NCBI GenBank assembly: GCA_002189035.1
Contig: CM007990.1
Coordinates: 5,146,001-5,210,000 of the forward strand
DNA length: 64,000 bases
Reading direction: 5' to 3'
Source of the DNA: Utricularia gibba
Taxonomy: Eukaryota > Plantae > Magnoliophyta
Notes under the pieces: generated by a model
The model's input: only the letters and a program-made list of their open reading frames with translations
What the model was told of the DNA's origin: nothing
Database searches by the model: none
Part shown: positions 2,198 to 16,336 of the stretch, in pieces
How the letters are laid out: every line of letters starts with the position of its first letter
Position numbering within the stretch: position 1 is the stretch's first letter
Position numbers and translations under genes: made by a program

Positions 2198-2270
2198 TTC
2201 GGTTGCCGGGACTTGAATCCGGGTCTCTCGGGTGAGAGCCGAGTATCCTAACCACCTAGACTACAACGGA
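2198..2270 (-). tRNA. tRNA-Glu (anticodon CTC) with two stem mismatches; possible pseudo-tRNA
   Basis: Minus strand reads TCCGTTGTAGTCTAGGTGGTTAGGATACTCGGCTCTCACCCGAGAGACCCGGATTCAAGTCCCGGCAACCGAA (73 nt). Anticodon arm CTCGG/CCGAG with loop CT-CTC-AC, followed by a T5 Pol III terminator. C3:C70 and A53:C61 are mismatched. Confidence 0.88.
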
Positions 2271-2429
2271 TTTATTAGTTGTCCATTTCAATTAAGAAAA
2301 CTGAAGGTTTTCACACAATAGCCTCATTCAAACTAATAGTTTTCGAGTTCCAGGAGTTGTACATCGGCGGGAGATGCAACTGCACGAGAGGAATCTTCAG
2401 CAACAGCAAATGATCCTGCACCAAAACCA

Positions 2430-5110
2430 TCAGCTACACAACACAGGAGTAGAGCGAGCTCCTTCTAAAGGACACTTACAGTAGCTGATCAGTCCATTAG
2501 AGTACAAGTAGGCCAGAAACACAGCCAGCAAGATGAGAATGATCGAAATCTGACAATTCAGAACAGCACCGGATCACTCTACCAGCAAACACACTTGATA
2601 CACGTACAGTGATTATTTAGAAGCCATGAGGGGAAAAAAAAAAACCTAACCGAAGATGCACTGATCTGGGGCTTGCTCTCTATGATGTAGGATTTCCTGT
2701 TGGATGCACAATACATTAAAGTCTACTCCAGTTTTATCAAGTGGGACAGCAAGATGGTTCCATACCATTGACTCATGGTTCCCGAGCTCTTGCAGTTTTC
2801 CAGAATGGATTCCAGGCGATCTCTTGTCTTGCTGGAATTGGGATCCGCCTCATCAATCTGTATGTTTGCAGAACAAGAGGTTTCCAGAGCATGATCACAA
2901 AATCTAAAAAGGCCAACTTCAATGGCTAGGAAGATTACCTTGGACTTTATAATCAGACAGAAATCATGAAAAGCCCCATAAACATCTGAAATCGTGTTGG
3001 TTCTGTAAATGATTTTAGCAGTCAAACCTACCCCAACATCAAACAAGAATAGTTAGACTTTTGCAGGAGATTAAGGATATGCAAGGAGTGAATATTGGGA
3101 CTCGGGAGCCATGAAGATCATACCGCGCCTCATTTTCACCACACCTCTGAAAACCTGAGGGTTGTTGTAGCACAAAGCTAAAGAGCCAATGGCCATGATC
3201 TGGTTGCATTAAAATGAACCACAGAGTGGGGGAGGGTAAGTGTAAGCTTATTAGTAGAATAGCTTGGGACACAGTAGTGGAATAAACGTGGTATGAGCAC
3301 CTGTGGAATTGCACAACATCGAAAGATGACTGGATCCCGCATGGCAGACATATATTTCAAGCAATCATCTACGTGCGACAGAGCATCCGCAATCATCTCA
3401 TTCAAGCACTGCACAGCCTTCACAGAGTTTTCTTCATACTTGAAGTCCTATGTTCACAAATCCAATCAAAATTCTCTCTCACAGAATACCATCTTTGTCA
3501 TTAGAGAATAACCATACCTCAAGTTTCATGGCGTACTTGCTCCAAATCTCACGAGGCCAGAACATACGTGGCTTTGGCATCTCATTGATATCCTCCAGAT
3601 AGTCTCTGATAATATTGACTTTCTGAAAGAATTAAGCAAGAAAATCCTTAACAGAAAGCCTCATTCTTCTCCCATATAGAATGACAAGCTTGTTTAACAG
3701 AAGTAGGAAGCATGGTGTACGGTTCTCTGAAATATGGGGAGGGAGAATCATAGATAATTGCCGTGTTTTGATCTTATTCATAACACTACTACCACTTCAA
3801 ACAATCCCAAAATCTAGTATCTTGTACCTGCAGAAGGACACCCATTGCATTAGAGAGAGTATCTGAAGCAAGATCTTCCCTCCCAGAAGCATGGAAAAGC
3901 CTCGACAACCCAAGTGCAATAACCCCGCACACACAGTGGCTGTACTCATTAAGATCGTCGACAGTTTCAACCTAGCAAGTACAAAAAATCTCAAACATTT
4001 CACGGCAAGCAAAGACTAGTCAGGCACGCACAAGTACATAAACGAATTTCAGAATCATGTCATTAACAAGTTTGATTATCACGTACCTCCTTGCAAATGA
4101 ATTTTGAAAATCCAGCCCCAATTCTCATGCTCATATCTTGTATTACCTCCTGATAACTGCACATAATTAAAGCCTGGACTTTAGACACCGGATATCACAA
4201 TAATAACGATTTAGCATCCAACATCAGAATGAAAAGCATCTTTCGCCCTCAACGGATCATAACTATAGCTGCACATTTTGCTCACACCTTTTATCAAGCT
4301 CCAAAAAAGCAGTCTGAACATGATAGAACTCATCCATGAGAACTTTGTACTCCTTTGTACCACCTACAAAGAGTAGATTATACTGAACACTCTCAAGACA
4401 GAAAAAAAGCCATTGCCAATATGAGGTAAGGAATCCAGAACTCACATGAAAAATGCCACTCTCGGTCGGGAAAATGACGATAAAAATCATTCAAAATAGG
4501 CACTTTCACATCTGCTTCAATGCTTGTATCGTCCTCTGTTGGAAAAGTATATAACGCGTGAAGCGTAATTAGTTCACATGCAAGATGGACTATGCAACCA
4601 TCAGGACAACGGTTTATGTCAAAGCTTGCTTCTTTAACTAACCCAAAGAAATCAACGCAAAAAACAGAGGAAATCTGTTCACAAGAGCCGAAGAAAACAA
4701 AAGCTTTAGCAGTTGGAATCCTACCAATGGTGTCGAGAGCACGGAGGACTAAATAGAACACGCACATCTGCAACAAGGAGACGTGAAGTGCGTAATGGAT
4801 CCATCACTACTTCAATTCAAATAAATGTAATGCTTGAACAAATGCTTTCTACGGTCCACCACCCGCGTCAGAAAGCACGATGCTGGCAACACACAGTCAC
4901 TAAAAATCCGATGAAATAAAAACTCACGATGTCCCGAAGATCGGAATCCAACTGCTGGATCACGAGAGCGTAACTTCTAGAAACCTTTTGGAGCATGGTG
5001 TAACAAAATCGCCAGTGTGGCTCCTTCGGGATCTGCTTCTCCACCCTCTTCATTGCCATCTTCAATTTCAGCAGCGGGTATATTTCGTCCAAATGCTGCA
5101 GCATCTCCAT
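2430..5110 (-). CDS. SQS: Squalene synthase-like protein, copy A (intact, about 426 aa, divergent active-site pocket)
   Basis: 13 exons: 5110-4928, 4767-4725, 4535-4446, 4363-4288, 4156-4087, 3971-3828, 3622-3518, 3447-3301, 3199-3124, 3027-2939, 2857-2766, 2696-2651, 2549-2430. All borders are GT-AG and in frame. Motifs [24 protein letters not shown] and a C-terminal TM helix. The last exon may instead splice 2480 to 2379. Confidence 0.95.
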
Positions 5111-5252
5111 TCCTCCACTCCCCTAACCGACACTCTCGTCCCTGGAGACAAGCCGCAGAAGTATGGAAAGAAAACAGCTGTGGAAATGCCCACTCCCCAG
5201 TCATCAGCCCCCACCCCTCTGAGAATCCCATCTTCGACCATACCGACAACCT

Positions 5253-5870: not shown

Positions 5871-6491
5871 CCAATCACTTTCCCTCCATTTTTTTAACAT
5901 ATTCAAATCCCAAGACAACACAAAAAAAAATTAATTAAGAGTACGAAAAATAAACAAATACTGATATCAAAATATTAATAACATAATATTAAATTTTTTA
6001 ATTAATTGAAAATGTTCTTTCTACTTACTCATCCTTCTTCCTGGGGATTATGCAAAAATATCTACTCTTTTCTTCTATGTTTTTTTTTTCAATCTTTTTG
6101 GTTGTTTGTCCTCTATATGTACTTTTTTTCAGGTGTTGATGTGATTGTTACAAATACATGTGTCTCCTTTTTGTGTTGTTCAACTTTGTTCCATTTTTTT
6201 CCTAGAGTGGCATGTCATGCTTCCTTGTAGAAATTAGATAATTTGGGATGCAAAGATTGAGAAAAATGATCATAAAGAATTAAATAAACTATTTTATTTT
6301 CCTACCTACAAAAACACAAGTTCACATATCAAAGGTTTTTCAAAACACAAAATATGAGAAACTCAACACCATTTAGTGTTTTTTTATTCAATACAAATGG
6401 TTTTTCGAGTTCCATGAGTTGTACATCGGCGGGAGATGCTGCTGCACGAGAGGAATCTTGAGCAGCAGCAAATGATCCTGCAGCGAAACCA

Positions 6492-9123
6492 TCAGCTACA
6501 CAACACAGCAGTAGAGCGAGCTCCTTCTGAAGGACACTTACAGTAACTGATCACTCCATTGGAGTAGAAGCAGGCCAGAAACACAGCCAGTAAGATGAAA
6601 ATGATCGACATCTGACAATTCAGAACAGCACCGGATCACTCTACCAGAAAAACACTTGATACACGTACAGTGATTATTTGGAAACCATGAGGGCAAAAAA
6701 AGAAAACTAACCGCAGATGCACTGATCCGGGGCTTGGTCTCTATGATGTAGGATCTCCTGTTGAATGCACATATGATTAAAGTCTACTCCAGTTTTATCA
6801 AGTGGGACAGCAAGATGGTTCCATACCATTGCCTCATGGTTCCCGAGCTCTTGCAGTTTTCCAGAATGGATTCCAGGCGATCTCTTGTCTTGCTGGAATT
6901 GGGATCCGCCTCATCAATCTGTATGTTTGCACCACGAGAGGAGCATCATCACGAAATCTAGAAAGGCCAACTTCAATGGCTAGGAAGATTACCTTGGACT
7001 TTATAATCAGAGAGAAATCATGAAAAGCCCCATAAACATCTGAAATTGTGTTGGTTCTGTGAATGACTTTAGCAGCCAGACCTACCCCAACATCAAGCAA
7101 GGATAGTCAGAAAATATGAGGCACTTTTGCAGGAGATTAAGGATATGCATGGAGTGAATATTGGGACATGGGAGCCAGGATGATCATACCGCGCCTCATT
7201 TTCACCACACCTCTGAAAACCTGAAGGTTGTTGTAGCTCAAAGCTAAAGTGCCAATGGCCATGATCTGGTTGCATTAAAATGAGAAGCACACAGTGGGGG
7301 AGGGTAAGTGTAAGCTTATTAGTAGGAGAACTTGGGACTCAATGGTAGAATAAACTTGGTATGAGCACCTGTGGAATTGCAGAAAATCGAAAGTTGGCTG
7401 GATCCCGCAAGGCAGACATACACTTCAAGCAATCATCTACGTGTGACAGAGCATCCGTAATCATGCCATTCAAGCACTGTACAGCCTTGAGAGAGTTTTC
7501 TTCATACTTGAGATCCTAAGTTCACAAAGCCAATCAAAATTCTCTTCCACAGAATACCATCTTTGTCATTAGGGAAATAACCATACCTCAAGTTTCATGG
7601 CGTACTTGCCCCAAATCTCACGAGGCCAGAACATACGTGACTTTGGTATCTCATTGATATCCTCCAGGTAGTCTTTGATAATATTGGTTTTCTGAAAGAA
7701 TTAAGCAAGAAAATTCTTAACAGAAAGCTTCTTTCTTCTCCCATATAGAATGACAAGCTTGTTTAACAAGAAGTATGATTCTCTGAAATATGGGGAGGGA
7801 GAATCATGGATAATTGCCGTGATCTGATCTTATTTATAACACTACCACTACTACTTCATACATTCCAAAAATCTAATATATTGTACCTGTAGAAACAAGC
7901 CCATAGAGTTGGATAGAGTATCTGAGGCAAGATCTTCCTTTCCAGAAGCATGGAAAAGCCTCGACAACCCAAGTCCAACAAGTCCGGCCACATAGTGGCA
8001 GTACTCATTATAATCATCTACAGTTTCAACCTAGTAAGTACAAAAAATCTCAAACATTTCATGGGTAGCAAAGGCTAGTCAGGCATACACAAGCACATAA
8101 ACAAATTTCAGAATCATGTCATTGACAAGTTTGATTATCATGTACCTCCTGGCAAATGAATTTCGCCATTCCAGCACCCATTCTCATGGTGATATCTTGT
8201 ATTACCTCCTGATAACTGCACATCATGAAAACCTGAACTTTAGACAGTGGATATCACAATAATAAAGATGTAGCATCCACTATCAGAATGGAAAGCATCT
8301 TTCACCCTCAACAGATCATAACTATAGCTGCACATTTTGCTCACACCTTTTACCAAGCTCCAAAAAAGCTGTCTGAACATGATAGAACTCGTCCATGAGA
8401 ACTTTGTACTCCTTTGTGCCACCTACAAAGAGTAGATTTTACTGAACACTCTCAAGACAGAAAATAGCCATTGACAGTATGAGGTAAGGAATCCAGAATT
8501 TTACTCACATGAAAAATGCCACTTACGGTCGGGCACATGACGATAAAAGTCATTCAAAATAGGCACTTTCACATCTGTTTCAATGCTTGTATCGTCCTCT
8601 GTTTGACAAGTAAATAACGCGGGAAGCGTAATTAGTTCACATGCAAGATGGACTATGCAACCATCAACACAACGGTTTATGTCAATTCATAAGAGCCGAA
8701 AAAACAAGAGCTTTAGGAGTTGGAATCCTACCAACAGTGTCCAGAGCACGGAGGACTAAATAGAACACGCACATCTGCAACAAGGAGACGTGAAGTACGT
8801 AATCGATCCATCACTACTTCAATTCAAATAAATGTAATACTTCAACAAATGCTTTCTACGGTCCACCACCCGCATCAGAAAGCACCATGCTGGCAACACA
8901 CCCCACACGTCACTGAAAATCCGATGAACTAAAAACTCACGGTATCCTTAAGATCGGAATCCAACTGGTGGATCACGAGAGCGAAACTTCTAGAAACCTT
9001 TTGGAGCATGGTGTAACAAAATCGCCAGTGTGGCTCCTTCGGGATCTGTTTCTCCACCCTCTTCATTGCCATCTTCAATTTCAGCAGCGGGTATAATTCG
9101 TCCAAACGCTGCAGCATCTCCAT
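6492..9123 (-). CDS. SQS: Squalene synthase, copy B (intact ORF, near-canonical core with several substitutions at conserved sites)
   Basis: Same 13-exon structure (exon 1 9123-8941), no stop or frameshift found. Motifs [49 protein letters not shown] and a TM tail. Confidence 0.94.
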
Positions 9124-9489: not shown

Positions 9490-11100
9490 GGTGTCTATTT
9501 GATAAGCGCCCACCTCTCTTCTAAAAAATATGAAAAATACCCATAATCTCAACACGTGTTGATAAATTACCATTGTTAATATTTTATTTAAAATTAAATA
9601 CATAAAAAATAAAATACAATGACATGTCAATGTATTGTATGGCATATTTTAAAAGTTTTTTTTATCTATGCATTTATATATATATTCATATTTATTTATT
9701 ATTTTATTACAATTTTCATAAACAATAATAAATATCATATTATTTGTATTTAAATGTATAATATTGAAAAACATTGTAATAAAATTTGATATATTATATT
9801 ATGTAATTTAGAAAATACAAAATAAATATCAATATAAATATTAAAAAGCTAAGCATAAATATTTTGAATGCTGAGTTTAATAACAATCAACGTACAACAT
9901 ATTTTGACTGTCGTCACATAATTCATAATCTATTTTGGTCATAATTTCAAAGAAAAACAACACTTACAAAAGGTTTTATAAGTAAATACATATTGTATTA
10001 CTCTTTTCAAACATAAATATTTTGATAAAATGATACAATTTTCAATATATAAAAGAGAGATCAACAATCCAAGAAATTTCCCTAAAATATTTGCATCGAT
10101 TAAAATAAGAAAAATTTTATATTCATGAAAAAATTTCCAATTTGAAATAAACTTGGTCAATCATTAACTAATAAAAATCTAAAAATCTATCACAAAAACA
10201 AAATATTCATACAAAACATCCAAAATAAAAGTCATAGCTATCTTCTATCATAAGAATGCCCAAAGTGTTTTTAGGCATCGCTTATAGCCGTAAGCAACAT
10301 CCAAAACATTTTTGGGCACCACTTATAACAGCGAATAACATTCAATGTTTAATGATAAATATTATTAAAAAATTTAATAATTTAATTCTATGTAAAATAC
10401 ATAGTTATAATATTTTGTTTTTTATTGAAAAAATATATTCGTGATATTGTTAAATATAATTTGTAAATAATTTTTTAAAATATTTTTTGAAAAATTTAAA
10501 ATAATTCAAAAAAAATTAAATATATATATATACTTTAATTAAATATATATTAACTTTTATTTTAAATCTGAAGTCTTCTTCTACTCAACTGTGGTTTCTT
10601 CCATCATTCTTTATCTTCAAAATCTACTTCTTCTTTGGGATGTATGTTAGATAAATCTTTTTATTTTTATCAACATATAAGATTTCAAATCTCATCAATT
10701 CATTCAAGATATGTAATATTTTTTTAGTTTTTATATTCCCTACATGTTCTATATTTTCTAATTCCATTAATATTCATAATAATAGATTACTTTTGAAGAT
10801 AGAATCAGACAAAAATATTTAATGCTAGAAAATTTTGTAATATCAAATAAAGAAGAAGATAAAAAATTTTTAAATAAACCACTATAATATGTTGGTCCTC
10901 ATACTTTTTTTAATTAACATGAAAAATTTTAGATGTGAATTAAGATTAACTATTCAAGCATTTTAATGTTATATACTCACCAATAACATCGTGTCAATAT
11001 TATAGATTTTTTACATTAATGAAATTGAAAAAATTAAAATGTACTTCTATAATAACAAATGTATTCTATTTAAAAATATATTCATCATGAAAATATACTA
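9490..11100. other. Very AT-rich non-coding block that replaces the inter-copy spacer between SQS copies B and C; probable decayed non-autonomous TE
   Basis: Homology to the spacers at 5871-6400 and 13146-13590 stops near 9490 and resumes for only 20 bp at 11101-11120. Local imperfect inverted repeats, e.g. 10258-10318. Confidence 0.4.
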
Positions 11101-12993
11101 AGTTCCAGGAGTTGTACATCATGAAATTGAAAATTATAGATCTGCTTGCATTAAAATGAGAAGCACACGTGTAAGCTTATTGGTAGGATAGCTTGGGACA
11201 CAGTAGTGGAATAAACGTGGTATGAGCACCTGTGGAATTGCACAACATCGAAAGATGACTGGATCCCGCACGGCAGACATATACTTCAAGCAATCATCTA
11301 CATGTGACAGAGCATCCGTAATCATCTCATTCAAGCACTGCACAGCCTTCACAGAGTTTTCTTCATACTTGAAGTCCTACGTTCACAGAGCCAATCAAAA
11401 TTCTCTCCCACAGAATACCATCTTTGTCATTAGAGAATAACCATACCTCAAGTTTCATGGCGTACTTGCTCCAAATCTCACGAGGCCAGAACATACGTGG
11501 CTTTGGCATCTCATTGATATCCTCCAGATAGTCTCTGATAATATTGACTTTCTGAAAGAATTAAGCAAGAAAATCCTTAACAGAAAGCGTCATTCTTCTC
11601 CCACATAGAATGACAAGCTTGTTTAACAGAAGTAGGAAGCATGGTGTACGGTTCTCTGAAATATGGGGAGGGAGAATCATAGATAATTGCCGTGTTTTGA
11701 TCTTATTCATAACACTACTACCACTTCAAACAATCCCAAAATCTAGTATCTTGTACCTGCAGAAAGACACCCATTGCATTAGAGAGAGTATCTGAAGCAA
11801 GATCTTCCCTCCCAGAAGCATGGAAAAGCCTCGACAACCCAAGTGCAACAAGCCCGGACGCATAGTGGCTGTACTCATTTAGATCGTCCACAGTTTCAAT
11901 CTATGAAGTACAAATAATCTCAAACATTTCATGGGTAGCAAAGGCTAGTCAGGCATACACAAGCACATAAACAAATTTCAGAATCATGGCATTAACAAGT
12001 TTGATTATCATGTACCTCCTGGCAAATGAATTTTGCCATTCCAGCCCCACTTCTCATGGTTACATCTTGTATTACCTCCTGAGATCTGCGCATAATGAAT
12101 GCATCAACTTTAGAAAGTGGATACCACAAACAGGCGATTATAACTATAGCTGCACATTTTGCTCACACCTTTTATCAAGCTCCAAAAAAGCAGTCTGAAC
12201 ATGATAGAACTTGTCCATGAGAACTTTGAACTCCTTTGTACCACCTACAAAGAGTAGATTTTACTGAACACTCTCAAGACAGAAAATAGCCGTTGCCAAA
12301 ATGAGGTAAGGAATCCAGAACTCACATGAAAAGTGCCACTCACGGTCGGGCACATGGCGATAAAAATCATTCAAAATAGGCACTTTCACATCTGTTTCAA
12401 TGCTTGTATCGTCCTCTGTTGGACAAGTAAATAACGCGGGAAGCATAATTAAATAGCATGCAAAATGGACTATGCAACCATCAAGACAACGGTTTATGTC
12501 AAAACATGCTTCTTTAACTAACCCAAAGAAATTAACACCAGAAACAGAGGAAATCAATCCATAAGAGCTGAAAAAAAGAAAAGCTTTAGGGGAATCCTAC
12601 CAACAGTGTCCAAAGCACGGAGGACTAAATAGAACACACAAAGCTGCAACAAGGAGACATGAAGTGCTTAATCGATCCATCACTATTTCAATTCAAATAA
12701 ATGTAAAATTTTCATCAAATGCTTTCTACAGTCCACCACCCGCATCAGAAAGCACCATGCTGGCAACACACCCCACACGTCACTGAAAATCCGATGAACT
12801 GAAAACTCACGGTATCCCGAAGATCGGAATCCAACTGGTGGATCACGAGAGCGCAACTTCTAGAAACCTTTTGGAGCATGGTGTAACAAAACCGCCAGTG
12901 TGGCTCCTTGGGGATCTGCTTCTCCACCCTCTTCATTTCCATCTTCAGTTTCAGCAGCGGGTATAATTCGTCCAAATGCTGCAGCATCCCCAT
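11085..12993 (-). pseudogene. SQS: Squalene synthase-like copy C: exons 1-8 intact, exons 9-13 deleted
   Basis: Exons 12993-12811, 12643-12601, 12415-12326, 12244-12169, 12085-12016, 11900-11757, 11551-11447 and 11376-11230 are in frame. After the exon 9 acceptor (11141) only ATC matches; the frame then reads [17 protein letters not shown] (TGA 11087-11085). Confidence 0.85.
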
Positions 12994-13642
12994 TCCTCCA
13001 CTCCCCTAACCGACACTCTCGTCCCTGGAGACAAGCCGCTAGAAGCATGGAAAGAAAAACAGGTGCAGAAATGCCCACTGCCGAGTCATCAGCCCCCACC
13101 CCCAGAGAATCCTATCTTCAACCACACCGACGAATGGCGACGTGACTTCCCTCCATTTCTTTGACATATTCAAATCCCAAGACACAAAAAAAAAACTATT
13201 GAATAAAAGTACGAAAAATACTAATCACATAATATTATATGAAAATGTTTCTTCTAGTTCCTTATCCTTCTTCTTCGGGAGTATGCCAAAATATCTACTA
13301 TTTTTTTTATTATTTTTTCAATCTTTTTGGTTGTTTGTCTTTATATGCACTTCCATATCTTCCTTTTTTCAGATTTTGATGTGATTGTTCATGTACAAAA
13401 ACATGTATCTCCTCTTTGTCTTGTTCAACTTTATTCCATTTTTTTCCTAGTGTTGCATGTCATGGTTCCTTGCAGGAATCGAATTGATAATTTACAAAAA
13501 CATAAGTTTACATATCAAATGCTTTTCAAAACACAAAATATGAGAAATTCAACACCATTTAGTGTTTTTTTATTCAATACAAATAGTTTCTCGCGAGAGG
13601 AATCTTCTGCAGCAGCAAATGATCCTGCAGCAAAAACATCAG

Positions 13643-16336
13643 CTACACAACACAGGAGTGGAGCGAGCTCCTTCTGAAAGAGTCAAACTTACAATAACTG
13701 ATCACTCCATTAGAGTACAAGTAGGCCAGAAACACCGCCAGCAAGATGAGAATGATCGAAACCTGACAATTCAGAACGACACCGAATCACTCTACCAGCA
13801 AACACACTTGATACATGTACAGTGATTATTTGGAAGCCATAAAAACTAACCGAAGATGCACTGATCTGGGGCTTGCTCTCTATGATGTAGGATCTCCTGT
13901 TGGATGCACATATGATTAAAGTTTACTCCAGTTTTATCAAATGGGACAGCAAGATGGTTCCATACCATTGCCTCATGGTTCCCGAGCTCTTGCAGTTTTC
14001 CAGAATGGATTCCAGGCGATCTTTTGTCTTGATTGAATTGGGATCCGCCTCATCAACCTGTATGTTAGCAGAAGAGGTTTCCAGAGCATCATCACAAAAT
14101 CTACAAAGGCCAACTTCAATGGCTAGGAAGATTACCTTGGACTTTAGAACCAGAGAGAAATCATGAAACGCCCCATAAACATCTGAAATCGTGTTGGTTC
14201 TGTAAATGATTTTAGCAGTCAGACCTACCCCAACATCAAACAAGAATAGTTAGAAATAAGAGTCACTTTTAAGGATATGAATGGAGTGAATGTTGGGACA
14301 TGGGAGTCATGATGATCATACCGCGCCTCATTTTCACCACACCTCTGAAAACCTGAAGGTTGTTGTAGCACAAAGCTAAAGTACCAATGGCCATGATCTG
14401 GTTGCATTAGAATGAGAAGCACACGTAAGCTCATCAGTAGGAGAGCTTGGGACACAGTTGTAGAATAAACGTGGTATGAGCACCTGTGGAATTGCACAAA
14501 ATCGAAAGTTGGCTGGATCCCGCAAGGCAGACATATACTTCAAGCAATCATCTACATGTGACAGAGCATTCGTAATCATGTCATTCAAGCACTGCACAGC
14601 CTTGACAGAGTTTTCTTCATACTTGAGATCCTACTTTCAGAAAGCCAAATACAATCAAAATTCTCTTCCACAGAATACCATCTTTGTCATTCGAGAAAAA
14701 ACCATACCTCGAGTTTCACGGCATACTTGCCCCAAATCTCACGAGGCCAGAACATACGTGACTTTGGTATCTCATTGATATCCTCCAGGTAGTCTCTGAT
14801 AATATTGGCTTTCTGAAAGAATTAAGCAAGAAAATCCTTAACAGAAAGCTTCTTTCTTCTCCCATATAGAATGACAAGCTTGTTTAACAAGTATGATTCT
14901 CTGAAATATGGGGAGGGAGAATCATGGATAATTGCCGTGATCTGATCTTATTTATAACACTACCACTACTACTTCATACATTCCTAAAATCTAATATATT
15001 GTACCTGTAGAAACAAACCCATAGAGTTGGATAGAGTATCTGAGGCAAGATCTTCCTTTCCAGAAGCATGGAAAAGCCTCGACAACCCAAGTCCAACAAG
15101 TCCGGCCACATAGTGGCAGTACTCATTGTAATCATCTACAGTTTCAACCTAGGAAGTACAAAAAATCTCAAGCATTTCATGGCTAGCAAAGACTAGTCAG
15201 GCATACACAAGCAGATAAACAAATTTCAGAATCATGTCACTAACAAGTTTGATTATCATGTACCTCCTGGCAAATGAATTTCGCCATTCCAGCACCCATT
15301 CTCATGGTGATATCTTGGATTACCTCCTGATAACTGCACGAAATGAAAGCCTGGACTTCAGACTGTGGGTATCACATAAATAACGATTTAGCATCCACCA
15401 TCAGAATGAAAAGCATCTTTCACCCTCAACGGATTATAACTTTAGCTGCACATTTTGCTCACACCTTTTACCAAGCCCCAAAAAAGCAGTCTGAACATGA
15501 TAGAACTCGTCCATGAGAACTTTGTACTCCTTTGTACCACCTACAAGAGAATAAGAGAGTAGATTTTACTGAACACTCTCAAGACAGAAAATAGCCATTG
15601 CCAATATGAGGTAAGGAATCCAGAACTCACATGAAAAATGCCACTCACGGTCGGCCACATGATGATAAAAATCAATCAAAATAGGCACTTTCACATCCGT
15701 TTCAATGCTTGTATCGTCCTCTATTGGACAAGTAAACAACGAGGGAAGCGTAATTAGCTCAAATGCATTCGGTGCTGAAATTTCAGCACGCAACACCAAA
15801 AAAAAAAAATGATGAGTCCTCTCATAAAAACAAGATGGACTATCCAACGATGAATCGCAAGGGTTTATACCAAAGTTTGCTTCTTTAACCATCCCAAAAA
15901 ATACCCCATTCCGGCCGTAGGGCTTCAGAAATCAATACATAAGAGCAGAAAAAACAAAAGCTTTAGGAGTTGGAATCCTACCAACAGTGTCCAACGCACG
16001 GAGGACTAAATAGAACACGCACACCTGCAACACGGAGACGTAAAGTGCTCAATCGATCCATCACCATTTCAATTCAAATAAATTTACTGTCGCATCAAAT
16101 GATTTCCACGGTAAACCACCCGCATCGAAAAGCACAACAAAACAAAAACTCACGGCATCACGAAGATCGGAATCCAGCTGCTGGATCACGAGAGCGAAAC
16201 TTCTAGAAACCTTATGGAGCATGGTGTAACAAAACCGCCATTGTGGCTCCTTCGGGATCTGCTTCTCCACGCTCTTCATTGCCGTCTTCAGTCTCAGCAT
16301 CGGGTATAATTCGTCCAAATGCTGCAGCATCCCCAT
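13643..16336 (-). CDS. SQS: Squalene synthase, copy D (most canonical copy, likely the housekeeping SQS)
   Basis: 13 exons (exon 1 16336-16154, exon 2 16024-15982, exon 3 15720-15631, exon 4 15540-15465, exon 5 15333-15264 and so on). Motifs [56 protein letters not shown] and a TM tail. Confidence 0.95.

What the first reader, a model, noticed from the sequence alone, without database searches (positions are those of the whole stretch)
2430..5110. Intact squalene synthase-like enzyme (copy A) with a rebuilt substrate pocket: candidate new head-to-head prenyltransferase
Seen (human FDFT1 numbering from memory): the reading frame, all splice sites, R52, Y73, R77, D80xxED84, Y171, Q212, R218, D219xxED223, VKMRR and the TM anchor are kept. 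Pocket and second-step residues are changed versus copy D: SRSF>SRSY (F54Y); [10 protein letters not shown]>[10 protein letters not shown] (M150I, M154F); [14 protein letters not shown]>[14 protein letters not shown] (C172S, Y174C, A176C, L178V, V179I, G180A); NSMGLFLQ>NAMGVLLQ (F210L); residue 214 is Val (Thr canonical, Ala in D); FRFCAIPQ>FRCCAIPQ (F288C, codon 3318-3316). Established, as recalled: F288 mutants of mammalian SQS lose the NADPH-dependent second step and accumulate presqualene diphosphate (PSPP); the Ala of YVAG is a product-specificity position distinguishing Botryococcus squalene synthase from SSL-3; inactive Arabidopsis SQS2 has Ser at the F288-equivalent site. Inference: first-step chemistry is preserved but the product or chain length differs (PSPP/presqualene alcohol, 1'-3-linked botryococcene-type, or shorter prenyl substrates given the bulkier M154F/G180A/V179I). 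Decay, as in SQS2, is the alternative.
Basis: partly seen in the sequence, partly recalled or inferred. Interest (0 to 1): 0.88.

Follow-up and report, generated by a model that had tools for sequence, protein, structure and literature searches.

The report
Expressed squalene synthase copy, remodelled pocket
One of four tandem squalene synthase genes in a compact plant (Lamiales-like) genome is intact, spliced and transcribed, keeps every catalytic residue but has rebuilt the greasy pocket that shapes the product, so it may make something other than squalene, although slow decay of a spare copy is not excluded.

Summary
Copy A (minus strand, ATG 5110) is an intact 14-exon gene for a 410-aa squalene synthase (SQS) homologue. 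RNA contigs from two studies show it spliced as modelled. Every listed substitution is present, including F288C at 3316-3318. Corrections: a 64-nt intron (2416-2479) splits the stop codon, so the CDS ends at 2414. Copy B is not canonical (R218K, Y276C, C289S, C303S). T214 and F54 vary in other plant SQS.

A kept 14 of 14 polar catalytic residues and changed 6 of 15 literature-defined hydrophobic pocket residues. In exons 6-8 the A/C-type stem took 14 nonsynonymous and 3 synonymous changes, against 2 and 5 on the B/D stem. Four of them lie on the pocket face of one helix.

The evidence stays ambiguous. Omega on that stem is about 0.5-1.2, all four copies evolve loosely, sister copy C is truncated, and no A-type relative was found. 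That absence is uninformative, because the window's own proteins were never returned.

Best reading (about 0.45): a functionally diverged head-to-head prenyltransferase with an altered second step. Rivals are a drifting weak or inactive spare, or still a squalene synthase. Euphorbia peplusol synthase and the Botryococcus SSL enzymes are precedents, so this is a new variant of a known kind. The scan noted this array before, on this same window only.

The parts
2300..5136 (-). Copy A transcription unit. ATG at 5110; the stop codon is split by the last intron and ends at 2414; the 3' UTR reaches at least 2300.
   Evidence: Gene model. RNA contigs of runs X1, X2, X3 and X5 lie on it with 0-1 mismatches and give the exon joints.
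4928..5110 (-). Exon 1 (61 codons). It holds the flap SRSY (human S51-F54, F54Y; codon 47).
   Evidence: F54 is described as a wall of the hydrophobic cavity in PMC10378455.
4725..4767 (-). Exon 2. With the start of exon 3 (4446-4535) it forms the first Asp-rich motif DTIED. Y73, R77, D80 and D84 are kept; V69M.
4087..4156 (-). Exon 5. The segment I146M, T/C147S, M150I, M154F, A155S (human numbering). Four of these five changes are specific to A; M150I is shared with the A/C stem.
3828..3971 (-). Exon 6. It holds the helix with catalytic Y171 (kept) and the changes Y/W168L, C172S, Y174C, A176C, L178V, V179I and G180A, then S206A, L209V and F210L. Q212 is kept.
3518..3622 (-). Exon 7. T214V, with N215, R218, DYLED and R228 kept.
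3301..3447 (-). Exon 8. FRCCAIPQ, with F288C at codon 3316-3318. Y276, C289 and P292 are kept.
3124..3199 (-). Exon 9. T299S, and the VKMRR loop (putative NADPH site) is kept.
   Evidence: The loop's role is given in PMC10378455 and PMC12219392.
2480..2549 (-). Exon 13, the C-terminal membrane anchor. It ends with the first base of the stop codon.
2416..2479 (-). A 64-nt GT..AG intron that splits the stop codon (T|GA). It is conserved in B and D.
   Evidence: Joint 2414/2479 in RNA contigs of X2 and X5. The same joint occurs in D. Sequence comparison.
6492..9123 (-). Copy B. An intact paralogue, canonical in the pocket helix but carrying R218K, Y276C, C289S and C303S.
   Evidence: Its expression was not tested.
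11230..12993 (-). Copy C. An A-type paralogue holding exons 1-8 only, truncated after exon 8.
   Evidence: Only low-depth unspliced RNA pieces are specific to it.
13470..16336 (-). Copy D. The most canonical paralogue; T214A is its only change among the literature-defined residues. It is spliced and expressed.

Best explanation
Copy A is a live, membrane-anchored enzyme of the squalene/phytoene synthase fold. It arose by tandem duplication of the plant's squalene synthase gene.

It still has everything needed to bind two prenyl diphosphates and ionise one of them: the flap SRS, Y73, R77, both Asp-rich motifs, Y171, Q212, N215, R218 and R228. It also keeps the VKMRR loop thought to bind NADPH.

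The hydrophobic wall that holds the prenyl tails and shields the cyclopropylcarbinyl cation of the second half-reaction has been rebuilt. The changes are F54Y, V69M, M150I, M154F, C172S, Y174C, A176C, V179I, G180A, F210L, T214V and F288C.

The most likely consequence (inferred, not shown) is this. A still condenses two farnesyl diphosphates to presqualene diphosphate. It then handles the rearrangement and reduction step differently from squalene synthase. The outcome would be a non-squalene C30 product, release of the intermediate, or, less likely, acceptance of a different chain length.

Shown here: intactness, splicing, transcription, and the pattern of substitutions. Inferred: any activity or product.
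For: - Intact 410-codon frame and 13 GT..AG introns.
- Spliced RNA contigs in two independent studies. One 408-nt contig joins exons 9, 8, 7 and 6 with 0-1 mismatch. Its depth is about one third to one half of copy D's.
- 14 of 14 polar catalytic residues are kept, while 6 of 15 literature-defined pocket liners changed. Fisher p is 0.005 against the rest of the protein and 0.011 (one-sided) against the polar set.
- In exons 6-8 the A/C stem has 14 nonsynonymous and 3 synonymous changes, against 2 and 5 on the B/D stem (p 0.02).
- The four stem changes on the Y171 helix (A positions 161, 165, 169, 173) point in the same direction as the documented liners A176, V179, L183 and F187 (p about 0.005).
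- Under strict neutrality, the exon 6-8 block and its splice sites would stay intact with probability of only about 0.01-0.03.
- Exons 6-8 have stayed split into two types (dS 0.25-0.28), while the flanking exons show much lower divergence (dS 0.06-0.18).
- Precedent: changes at A176, T214 and T299 equivalents are among those that switch Euphorbia SQS to peplusol synthase.
Against: - Omega on the A-type stem is 0.46-1.24 depending on how five unpolarised synonymous changes are assigned. This is compatible with loss of constraint. With all five placed on that stem, the contrast with B/D is no longer significant (p 0.12).
- All four tips have omega of 0.4-0.76. A's tip (0.76) is as loose as that of truncated C (0.61).
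- The only other A-type copy (C) has lost its 3' half, so the type is dispensable at least in one dose.
- F288 replacements abolish the second step in mammalian SQS.
- Copy B also carries odd active-site residues, which fits general relaxation in a redundant array.
- No A-type relative was seen in three database searches.
- No biochemical data exist, and no structure model of A could be made.
- The neighbouring genes give no sign of a biosynthetic cluster.
Confidence: 0.45

Rival explanations
1. A is a redundant spare copy drifting under relaxed selection. It is still transcribed and folded, but catalytically weak or dead, like Arabidopsis SQS2 (recalled from memory). It is on its way to the fate of truncated copy C.
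For: Omega on the A-type stem is compatible with 1, and all tips have omega 0.4-0.76. C, the sister of A, is truncated. B also carries R218K, Y276C, C289S and C303S. F288 is needed for the second half-reaction. D has the most canonical core (89-91% identical to Lamiales SQS, against 75-77% for A) and the higher contig depth. No A-type orthologue was found.
Against: None of 14 polar catalytic residues changed, while 6 of 15 liners did. The frame and 26 splice-site dinucleotides are intact. Neutral survival of the exon 6-8 block alone has probability of about 0.01-0.03. Substitutions sit on the pocket-facing face of the helix rather than at random. Spliced transcripts occur in two studies. The failure to find orthologues is uninformative, because the searches never returned the window's own proteins.
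Confidence: 0.35
2. A is still a squalene synthase, perhaps with altered kinetics, inhibitor sensitivity or tissue use. On this reading the pocket changes are tolerated variation.
For: All catalytic motifs and the NADPH loop are kept. Several of the 'odd' residues occur singly in other plant SQS that are annotated as SQS but not assayed here: T214A/V/I, F54S and A176S. From memory, some F288 replacements in rat SQS retain partial activity.
Against: A has 27 A-specific departures at columns at least 97% conserved in 104 eudicot SQS, against 6 for D. F288, Y174, C172, G180, M150 and M154 are invariant in that panel. No other sequence among the 389 fetched combines these changes.
Confidence: 0.2

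Closest known systems
Plant squalene synthase (EC 2.5.1.21; human FDFT1 structures 3VJ8, 3WEG and others)
   Same: The same fold and length, with E 4e-88 to human SQS over residues 34-359. Both Asp-rich motifs, Y171, Q212, R218, R228, the VKMRR loop and the C-terminal anchor are present. Exon structure matches its neighbours B and D. A nests inside Lamiales SQS in the tree.
   Different: F288C, A176C, V179I, Y174C, C172S, G180A, M150I, M154F, F54Y, V69M, F210L and T214V. The core (exons 5-9) is only 75-77% identical to Lamiales SQS, against 89-91% for copy D.
Euphorbia peplusol synthase EpSS-L1/ElSS-L1 (Czechowski et al. 2025, PMC12219392)
   Same: A tandem duplicate of SQS lying next to a squalene-making copy. 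It also has accelerated evolution, kept Asp-rich motifs, and changes at the equivalents of human A176, T214 and T299. The A/C stem passed through A176S, the very residue found in peplusol synthase.
   Different: None of the seven determinant residues is identical: A has F, V, N, S, C, R, C where EpSS-L1 has M, M, T, G, Y, P, S. The NADPH-loop Arg is kept in A. The origin is independent, in the Lamiales and not Euphorbia. A is 85% identical to its partner, against 72% for the Euphorbia pair.
Botryococcus braunii SSL-1/-2/-3 and lycopaoctaene synthase (PMC4823828)
   Same: SQS duplicates that keep the catalytic motifs but split or redirect the two half-reactions, or change chain length.
   Different: These are algal, roughly 45-60% identical to SQS, and of independent origin. 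Which residues set their specificity could not be checked in the held library. The A176 and F288 links are recollections only.
Arabidopsis SQS2 and the uncharacterised Eucalyptus 'squalene synthase-like' P0149
   Same: Both are divergent plant SQS paralogues with changes at pocket positions. SQS2 has Ser at the F288 site and is inactive (recalled from memory). P0149 has A176S, V179I, T214Q, C289W and P292F.
   Different: The residue sets and lineages differ. P0149 also alters the flap (SKTF) and N215, which A keeps.

Membership tests
Squalene/phytoene synthase superfamily (Pfam PF00494, class 1 head-to-head prenyltransferases) | Significant sequence similarity over the whole catalytic domain | tested here: met
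   phmmer against PDB gives human SQS chains at E 4e-88 over residues 34-359. The nearest database proteins all carry PF00494.
Squalene/phytoene synthase superfamily (Pfam PF00494, class 1 head-to-head prenyltransferases) | Two Asp-rich motifs (DxxED) that bind Mg2+ and diphosphate | tested here: met
   DTIED and DYLED are present.
Squalene synthase proper (EC 2.5.1.21) | Catalytic Tyr171, flap S51-R52-S53, Q212, N215, R218 and R228 | tested here: met
   All 14 polar residues taken from the literature are identical in A.
Squalene synthase proper (EC 2.5.1.21) | Phe288, required for the second (rearrangement and reduction) half-reaction | tested here: not met
   Cys (TGT, 3316-3318). Phe is found in 104 of 104 eudicot SQS. 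Its role is given in PMC10378455.
Squalene synthase proper (EC 2.5.1.21) | Conserved hydrophobic pocket (F54, V69, F72, A176, V179, L183, F187, M207, L211, T214, Y276, C289, P292, C303) | tested here: not met
   With F288 included, 6 of 15 liners changed: F54Y, V69M, A176C, V179I, T214V and F288C.
Squalene synthase proper (EC 2.5.1.21) | JK-loop VKMRR/VKIRK (putative NADPH site) and a C-terminal membrane anchor | tested here: met
   VKMRR and a hydrophobic C-terminal stretch of about 23 residues are present.
Squalene synthase proper (EC 2.5.1.21) | Makes squalene from 2 FPP plus NADPH | not testable with these tools
   This needs an enzyme assay.
Peplusol synthase (Euphorbia EpSS-L1 type) | Determinant residues M69, S173, M208, T209, G294, Y298 and P313 (EpSS-L1 numbering) | tested here: not met
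   A has F, C, V, N, S, C and R at these positions.
Peplusol synthase (Euphorbia EpSS-L1 type) | Membership of the Euphorbia-specific clade | tested here: not met
   A, B, C and D form one clade (support 100) inside the core Lamiales.

The most novel reading that the evidence does not exclude
Copy A is an independently evolved plant squalene-synthase-like enzyme, in a compact Lamiales genome, that no longer makes squalene. Instead it would make a different head-to-head product from farnesyl diphosphate: a presqualene-derived alcohol, a 1'-3-linked or otherwise rearranged C30 hydrocarbon, or a mixed-chain product. That would define a second angiosperm route to non-squalene linear triterpenoids, using a residue solution different from peplusol synthase.
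Probability: 0.3. Interest if true: 0.75.

Novelty: new variant of a known kind. Interest (0 to 1): 0.55.

Why it matters
Squalene synthase is among the most conserved enzymes of sterol metabolism. Natural variants that redirect its carbocation chemistry are rare: the Botryococcus SSLs and Euphorbia peplusol synthase. They are valuable both for understanding product control and for making linear triterpenes.

Here a natural series sits side by side in one array: a near-canonical copy (D), a lightly altered copy (B), a strongly remodelled copy (A) and a truncated sister of A (C). This gives a ready-made mutational path, for example A176 to Ser to Cys, to test which pocket residues steer the second half-reaction.

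If A proves inactive, the array is still a clean example of birth-and-death evolution in an essential gene family within a compact genome.

Tried and rejected
1. Database searches for A-type relatives. A spliced protein has no reference, so I built profile queries from scaffold proteins plus A's exons given by reference.
- MAFFT misplaced fragment rows in most attempts (A1-A5, A7-A9). Only A6, A10, A11 and A12 were clean or nearly so (A12 has one short misplaced stretch); A6, A10 and A12 were searched.
- The three searches returned only canonical SQS.
- They never returned the window's own proteins, so absence of A-type relatives is uninformative.

2. The exon-6 search of the 50% representatives gave nothing above 71% identity. 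All plant SQS collapse into a few clusters there.

I did not attempt it elsewhere. I used site-pattern counts among extant sequences with three cDNA outgroups instead.

4. Structure prediction of A, and distance-based definition of the pocket, were left out. Full-length A has no reference and models give no coordinates. Pocket residues were taken from papers instead.

5. One search used a typed early model of A (426 aa, with a wrong C-terminal tail), against the instruction on long strings. Its aligned region (34-359) is unaffected. I did not repeat this.

6. Literature checks failed for Arabidopsis SQS2, for the Botryococcus SSL-3 determinants and for the lycopaoctaene synthase determinants. 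Those points remain recollections.

7. A biosynthetic gene cluster reading is rejected. The neighbours are a helicase, kinases, GH17, MCM, SBP, IQ-like and RING genes.

8. An exact look-up of a neighbouring kinase ORF, meant to name the genome, found nothing.

Full report
**What is there.** The window is nuclear plant DNA. On the minus strand between 16336 and about 2300 lie four head-to-tail squalene synthase (SQS) homologues (tblastn and genomic alignment).
- Copy A starts at 5110.
- It has 13 coding exons: 5110-4928, 4767-4725, 4535-4446, 4363-4288, 4156-4087, 3971-3828, 3622-3518, 3447-3301, 3199-3124, 3027-2939, 2857-2766, 2696-2651 and 2549-2480.
- Every intron is GT..AG and there is no stop or frameshift.
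- The finding's lower end (2430) is the stop of an unspliced reading. RNA contigs show a further 64-nt intron (2416-2479) that splits the stop codon (T at 2480, GA at 2415-2414).
- The protein is therefore 410 aa and ends just after the membrane anchor. B and D share this feature.
- B (9123-6492) and D (16336-13639) are intact. C (12993-11230) has exons 1-8 only.

**The substitutions.** A phmmer search of solved structures aligns A to human SQS at E 4e-88 and fixes the numbering.
- All residues it listed as kept are kept. F288C is TGT at 3318-3316.
- Against 104 full-length eudicot SQS, A departs at 38 of 235 columns that are at least 97% conserved. B departs at 22, D at 17, and C at 28 of 191.
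- Counting only changes derived in one copy, A has 27 at such columns and D has 6.
- Some single changes are less special than claimed. T214A/V/I, F54S and A176S occur in other plant SQS.
- No other sequence among the 389 fetched combines them.

**Expression.** RNA-run contigs of the same (coded) organism carry spliced A.
- One 408-nt contig joins exons 9, 8, 7 and 6 with 0-1 mismatch in three runs of one study. A run of a second study also holds spliced A.
- D is spliced and present at roughly two to three times the contig depth in the first study. No D-specific contig was seen in the small second-study run.
- Contig depth is a poor measure of expression, so this shows only that A is transcribed at a comparable order of magnitude.
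- C has only low-depth, unspliced pieces specific to it. B could not be tested.

**Origin.**
- In a protein tree the four copies form one clade (support 100) inside the core Lamiales, on a long stem (0.31). A and C are sisters (support 98).
- Across the catalytic core (exons 5-9), D is 89-91% identical to Lamiales SQS and A is 75-77%. D is therefore the best candidate for the housekeeping enzyme.
- The long stem comes largely from changes in the N- and C-terminal regions that all copies share.
- DNA runs of the organism assemble to about 95 Mb, and the genes here are very compact.
- This fits a small-genome Lamiales lineage. From memory, such lineages (Lentibulariaceae) have fast substitution rates, which would explain the stem. 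I could not test this.
- In exons 6-8 the tree is ((A,C),(B,D)). dS between the two types is 0.25-0.28, and dS within each type is 0.06-0.07.
- The flanking exons show lower, scrambled divergences. This fits an old duplication into two types, a later duplication of a two-gene unit, and gene conversion outside the catalytic block. It agrees with the sibling note s1-222662.

**Pattern of change.** I used three Lamiales/Solanales cDNA outgroups (L001-L003) and simple site-pattern counts.

| Branch, exons 6-8 | Nonsynonymous | Synonymous |
|---|---|---|
| A/C stem | 14 | 3 |
| B/D stem | 2 | 5 |
| Not polarisable | 1 | 5 |

- The two stems differ at Fisher p 0.02. This falls to 0.12 if all five unpolarised synonymous changes are given to the A/C stem.
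- Omega is then about 0.5-1.2 on the A/C stem, against 0.05-0.11 on the B/D stem.
- The A tip adds Y174C, Ser176-to-Cys, L178V, V179I and F210L. In exon 5 it adds C147S-equivalent, M154F and A155S.
- Codon 176 went from Ala to Ser on the stem (still Ser in C, as in peplusol synthase) and then to Cys in A.
- Tip omegas are 0.76 (A), 0.61 (B), 0.41 (D) and 0.61 (C).

- polar ligand and catalytic residues from PMC4006925 and PMC10378455;
- hydrophobic liners from PMC10378455, PMC6102583 and PMC12219392.

The results were as follows.
- A changed 0 of 14 polar residues and 6 of 15 liners: F54Y, V69M, A176C, V179I, T214V and F288C.
- The liners are enriched against the rest of the protein (p 0.005) and against the polar set (one-sided p 0.011).
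- D changed only T214A. B changed Y276C, C289S, C303S and R218K.
- On the helix that carries Y171, the four stem changes (A positions 161, 165, 169, 173) have i+4 spacing. On an ideal helical wheel they point the same way as the documented liners A176, V179, L183 and F187 (joint p about 0.005). This assumes helix geometry, not coordinates.
- A simulation of neutral change at the age of the A type (d 0.11-0.13) leaves the exon 6-8 frame and its splice sites intact in only 1-3% of cases, indels ignored.

**Interpretation.** The data fit an enzyme that keeps prenyl-diphosphate binding and ionisation but has a reshaped cavity around the second-step cation.
- F288 is reported as needed for the second half-reaction.
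- Positions equivalent to A176, T214 and T299 are among the seven that interconvert Euphorbia SQS and peplusol synthase.
- I therefore favour (0.45) a diverged head-to-head prenyltransferase whose second step or product differs from squalene synthesis.
- The changes both enlarge the cavity (F288C, Y174C) and fill it (M154F, G180A, V179I, A176C). I do not endorse the 'shorter substrate' idea over others.
- The main rival (0.35) is drift of a redundant copy. Omega on the stem does not exclude 1, all copies are loose, C is truncated, B is also odd, and no orthologue supports long-term conservation.
- A third reading (0.2) is that A still makes squalene.

**Comparison with the known.**
- A is a member of the squalene/phytoene synthase superfamily.
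- It fails two defining features of squalene synthase proper: F288 and the conserved pocket.
- It is not a peplusol synthase, with 0 of 7 determinants and a different clade.
- Divergent SQS paralogues recur in plants and algae. Examples are Euphorbia, Botryococcus, Arabidopsis SQS2 (from memory) and an uncharacterised Eucalyptus paralogue seen here.
- So this is a new variant of a known kind, not a new kind.

**Limits.**
- Full-length A could not be searched or modelled, because a spliced protein has no reference.
- The profile work-arounds never retrieved the window's own proteins.
- Ancestral reconstruction was not available.
- Several literature points remain recollections.
- Counts are small throughout.

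Noticed in passing
window 2416-2479 (A); about 13624-13692 (D); the equivalent position in B near 6476-6541: All intact copies have a short (64-68 nt) intron that splits the stop codon (T|GA) just after the membrane anchor. It is confirmed by RNA joints for A and D.
   Followed up: partly
window 6492-9123 (-): Copy B has a canonical Y171 helix but carries R218K, Y276C, C289S and C303S (human numbering) at otherwise near-invariant active-site positions. Its expression was not tested.
   Followed up: partly
window 10300-11230: Copy C stops after exon 8. The DNA where exons 9-13 should lie is AT-rich and unrelated, so it is either a deletion or an insertion. Only low-depth unspliced RNA pieces are specific to C.
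   Followed up: partly
window 2198-2270 (-): A tRNA-Glu(CTC) gene lies on the same strand just downstream of A. One RNA contig that covers A's 3' UTR runs about 100 nt beyond 2300, so it may reach this tRNA gene.
   Followed up: no
window 13639-16336 (-): Copy D, the most canonical copy, has Ala at T214. All four copies share departures at sites at least 97% conserved in eudicot SQS (for example Y98P/A, H119Y, S122Q, K361E, L369M, R372W), mostly in the N- and C-terminal regions. The cause is either a fast-evolving lineage or relaxed constraint on the C-terminal hinge.
   Followed up: partly
proteins P0149, P0010 (Eucalyptus and relatives); P0078, P0059: An uncharacterised Eucalyptus 'squalene synthase-like' paralogue has a changed flap and pocket (SKTF, A176S, V179I, T214Q, N215D, C289W, P292F). 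Two plant annotations join a decayed SQS-like part to a polyprenyl synthase-like part, probably because neighbouring genes were merged.
   Followed up: no
window 17500-64000: The neighbouring genes are ordinary and densely packed: an IQ/DUF4005-like gene, MCM N-terminal domain, DEAD-box helicase, two protein kinases, an SBP-box gene, GH17 glucanase with X8, and a RING finger. There is no P450, cyclase or acyltransferase.
   Followed up: partly
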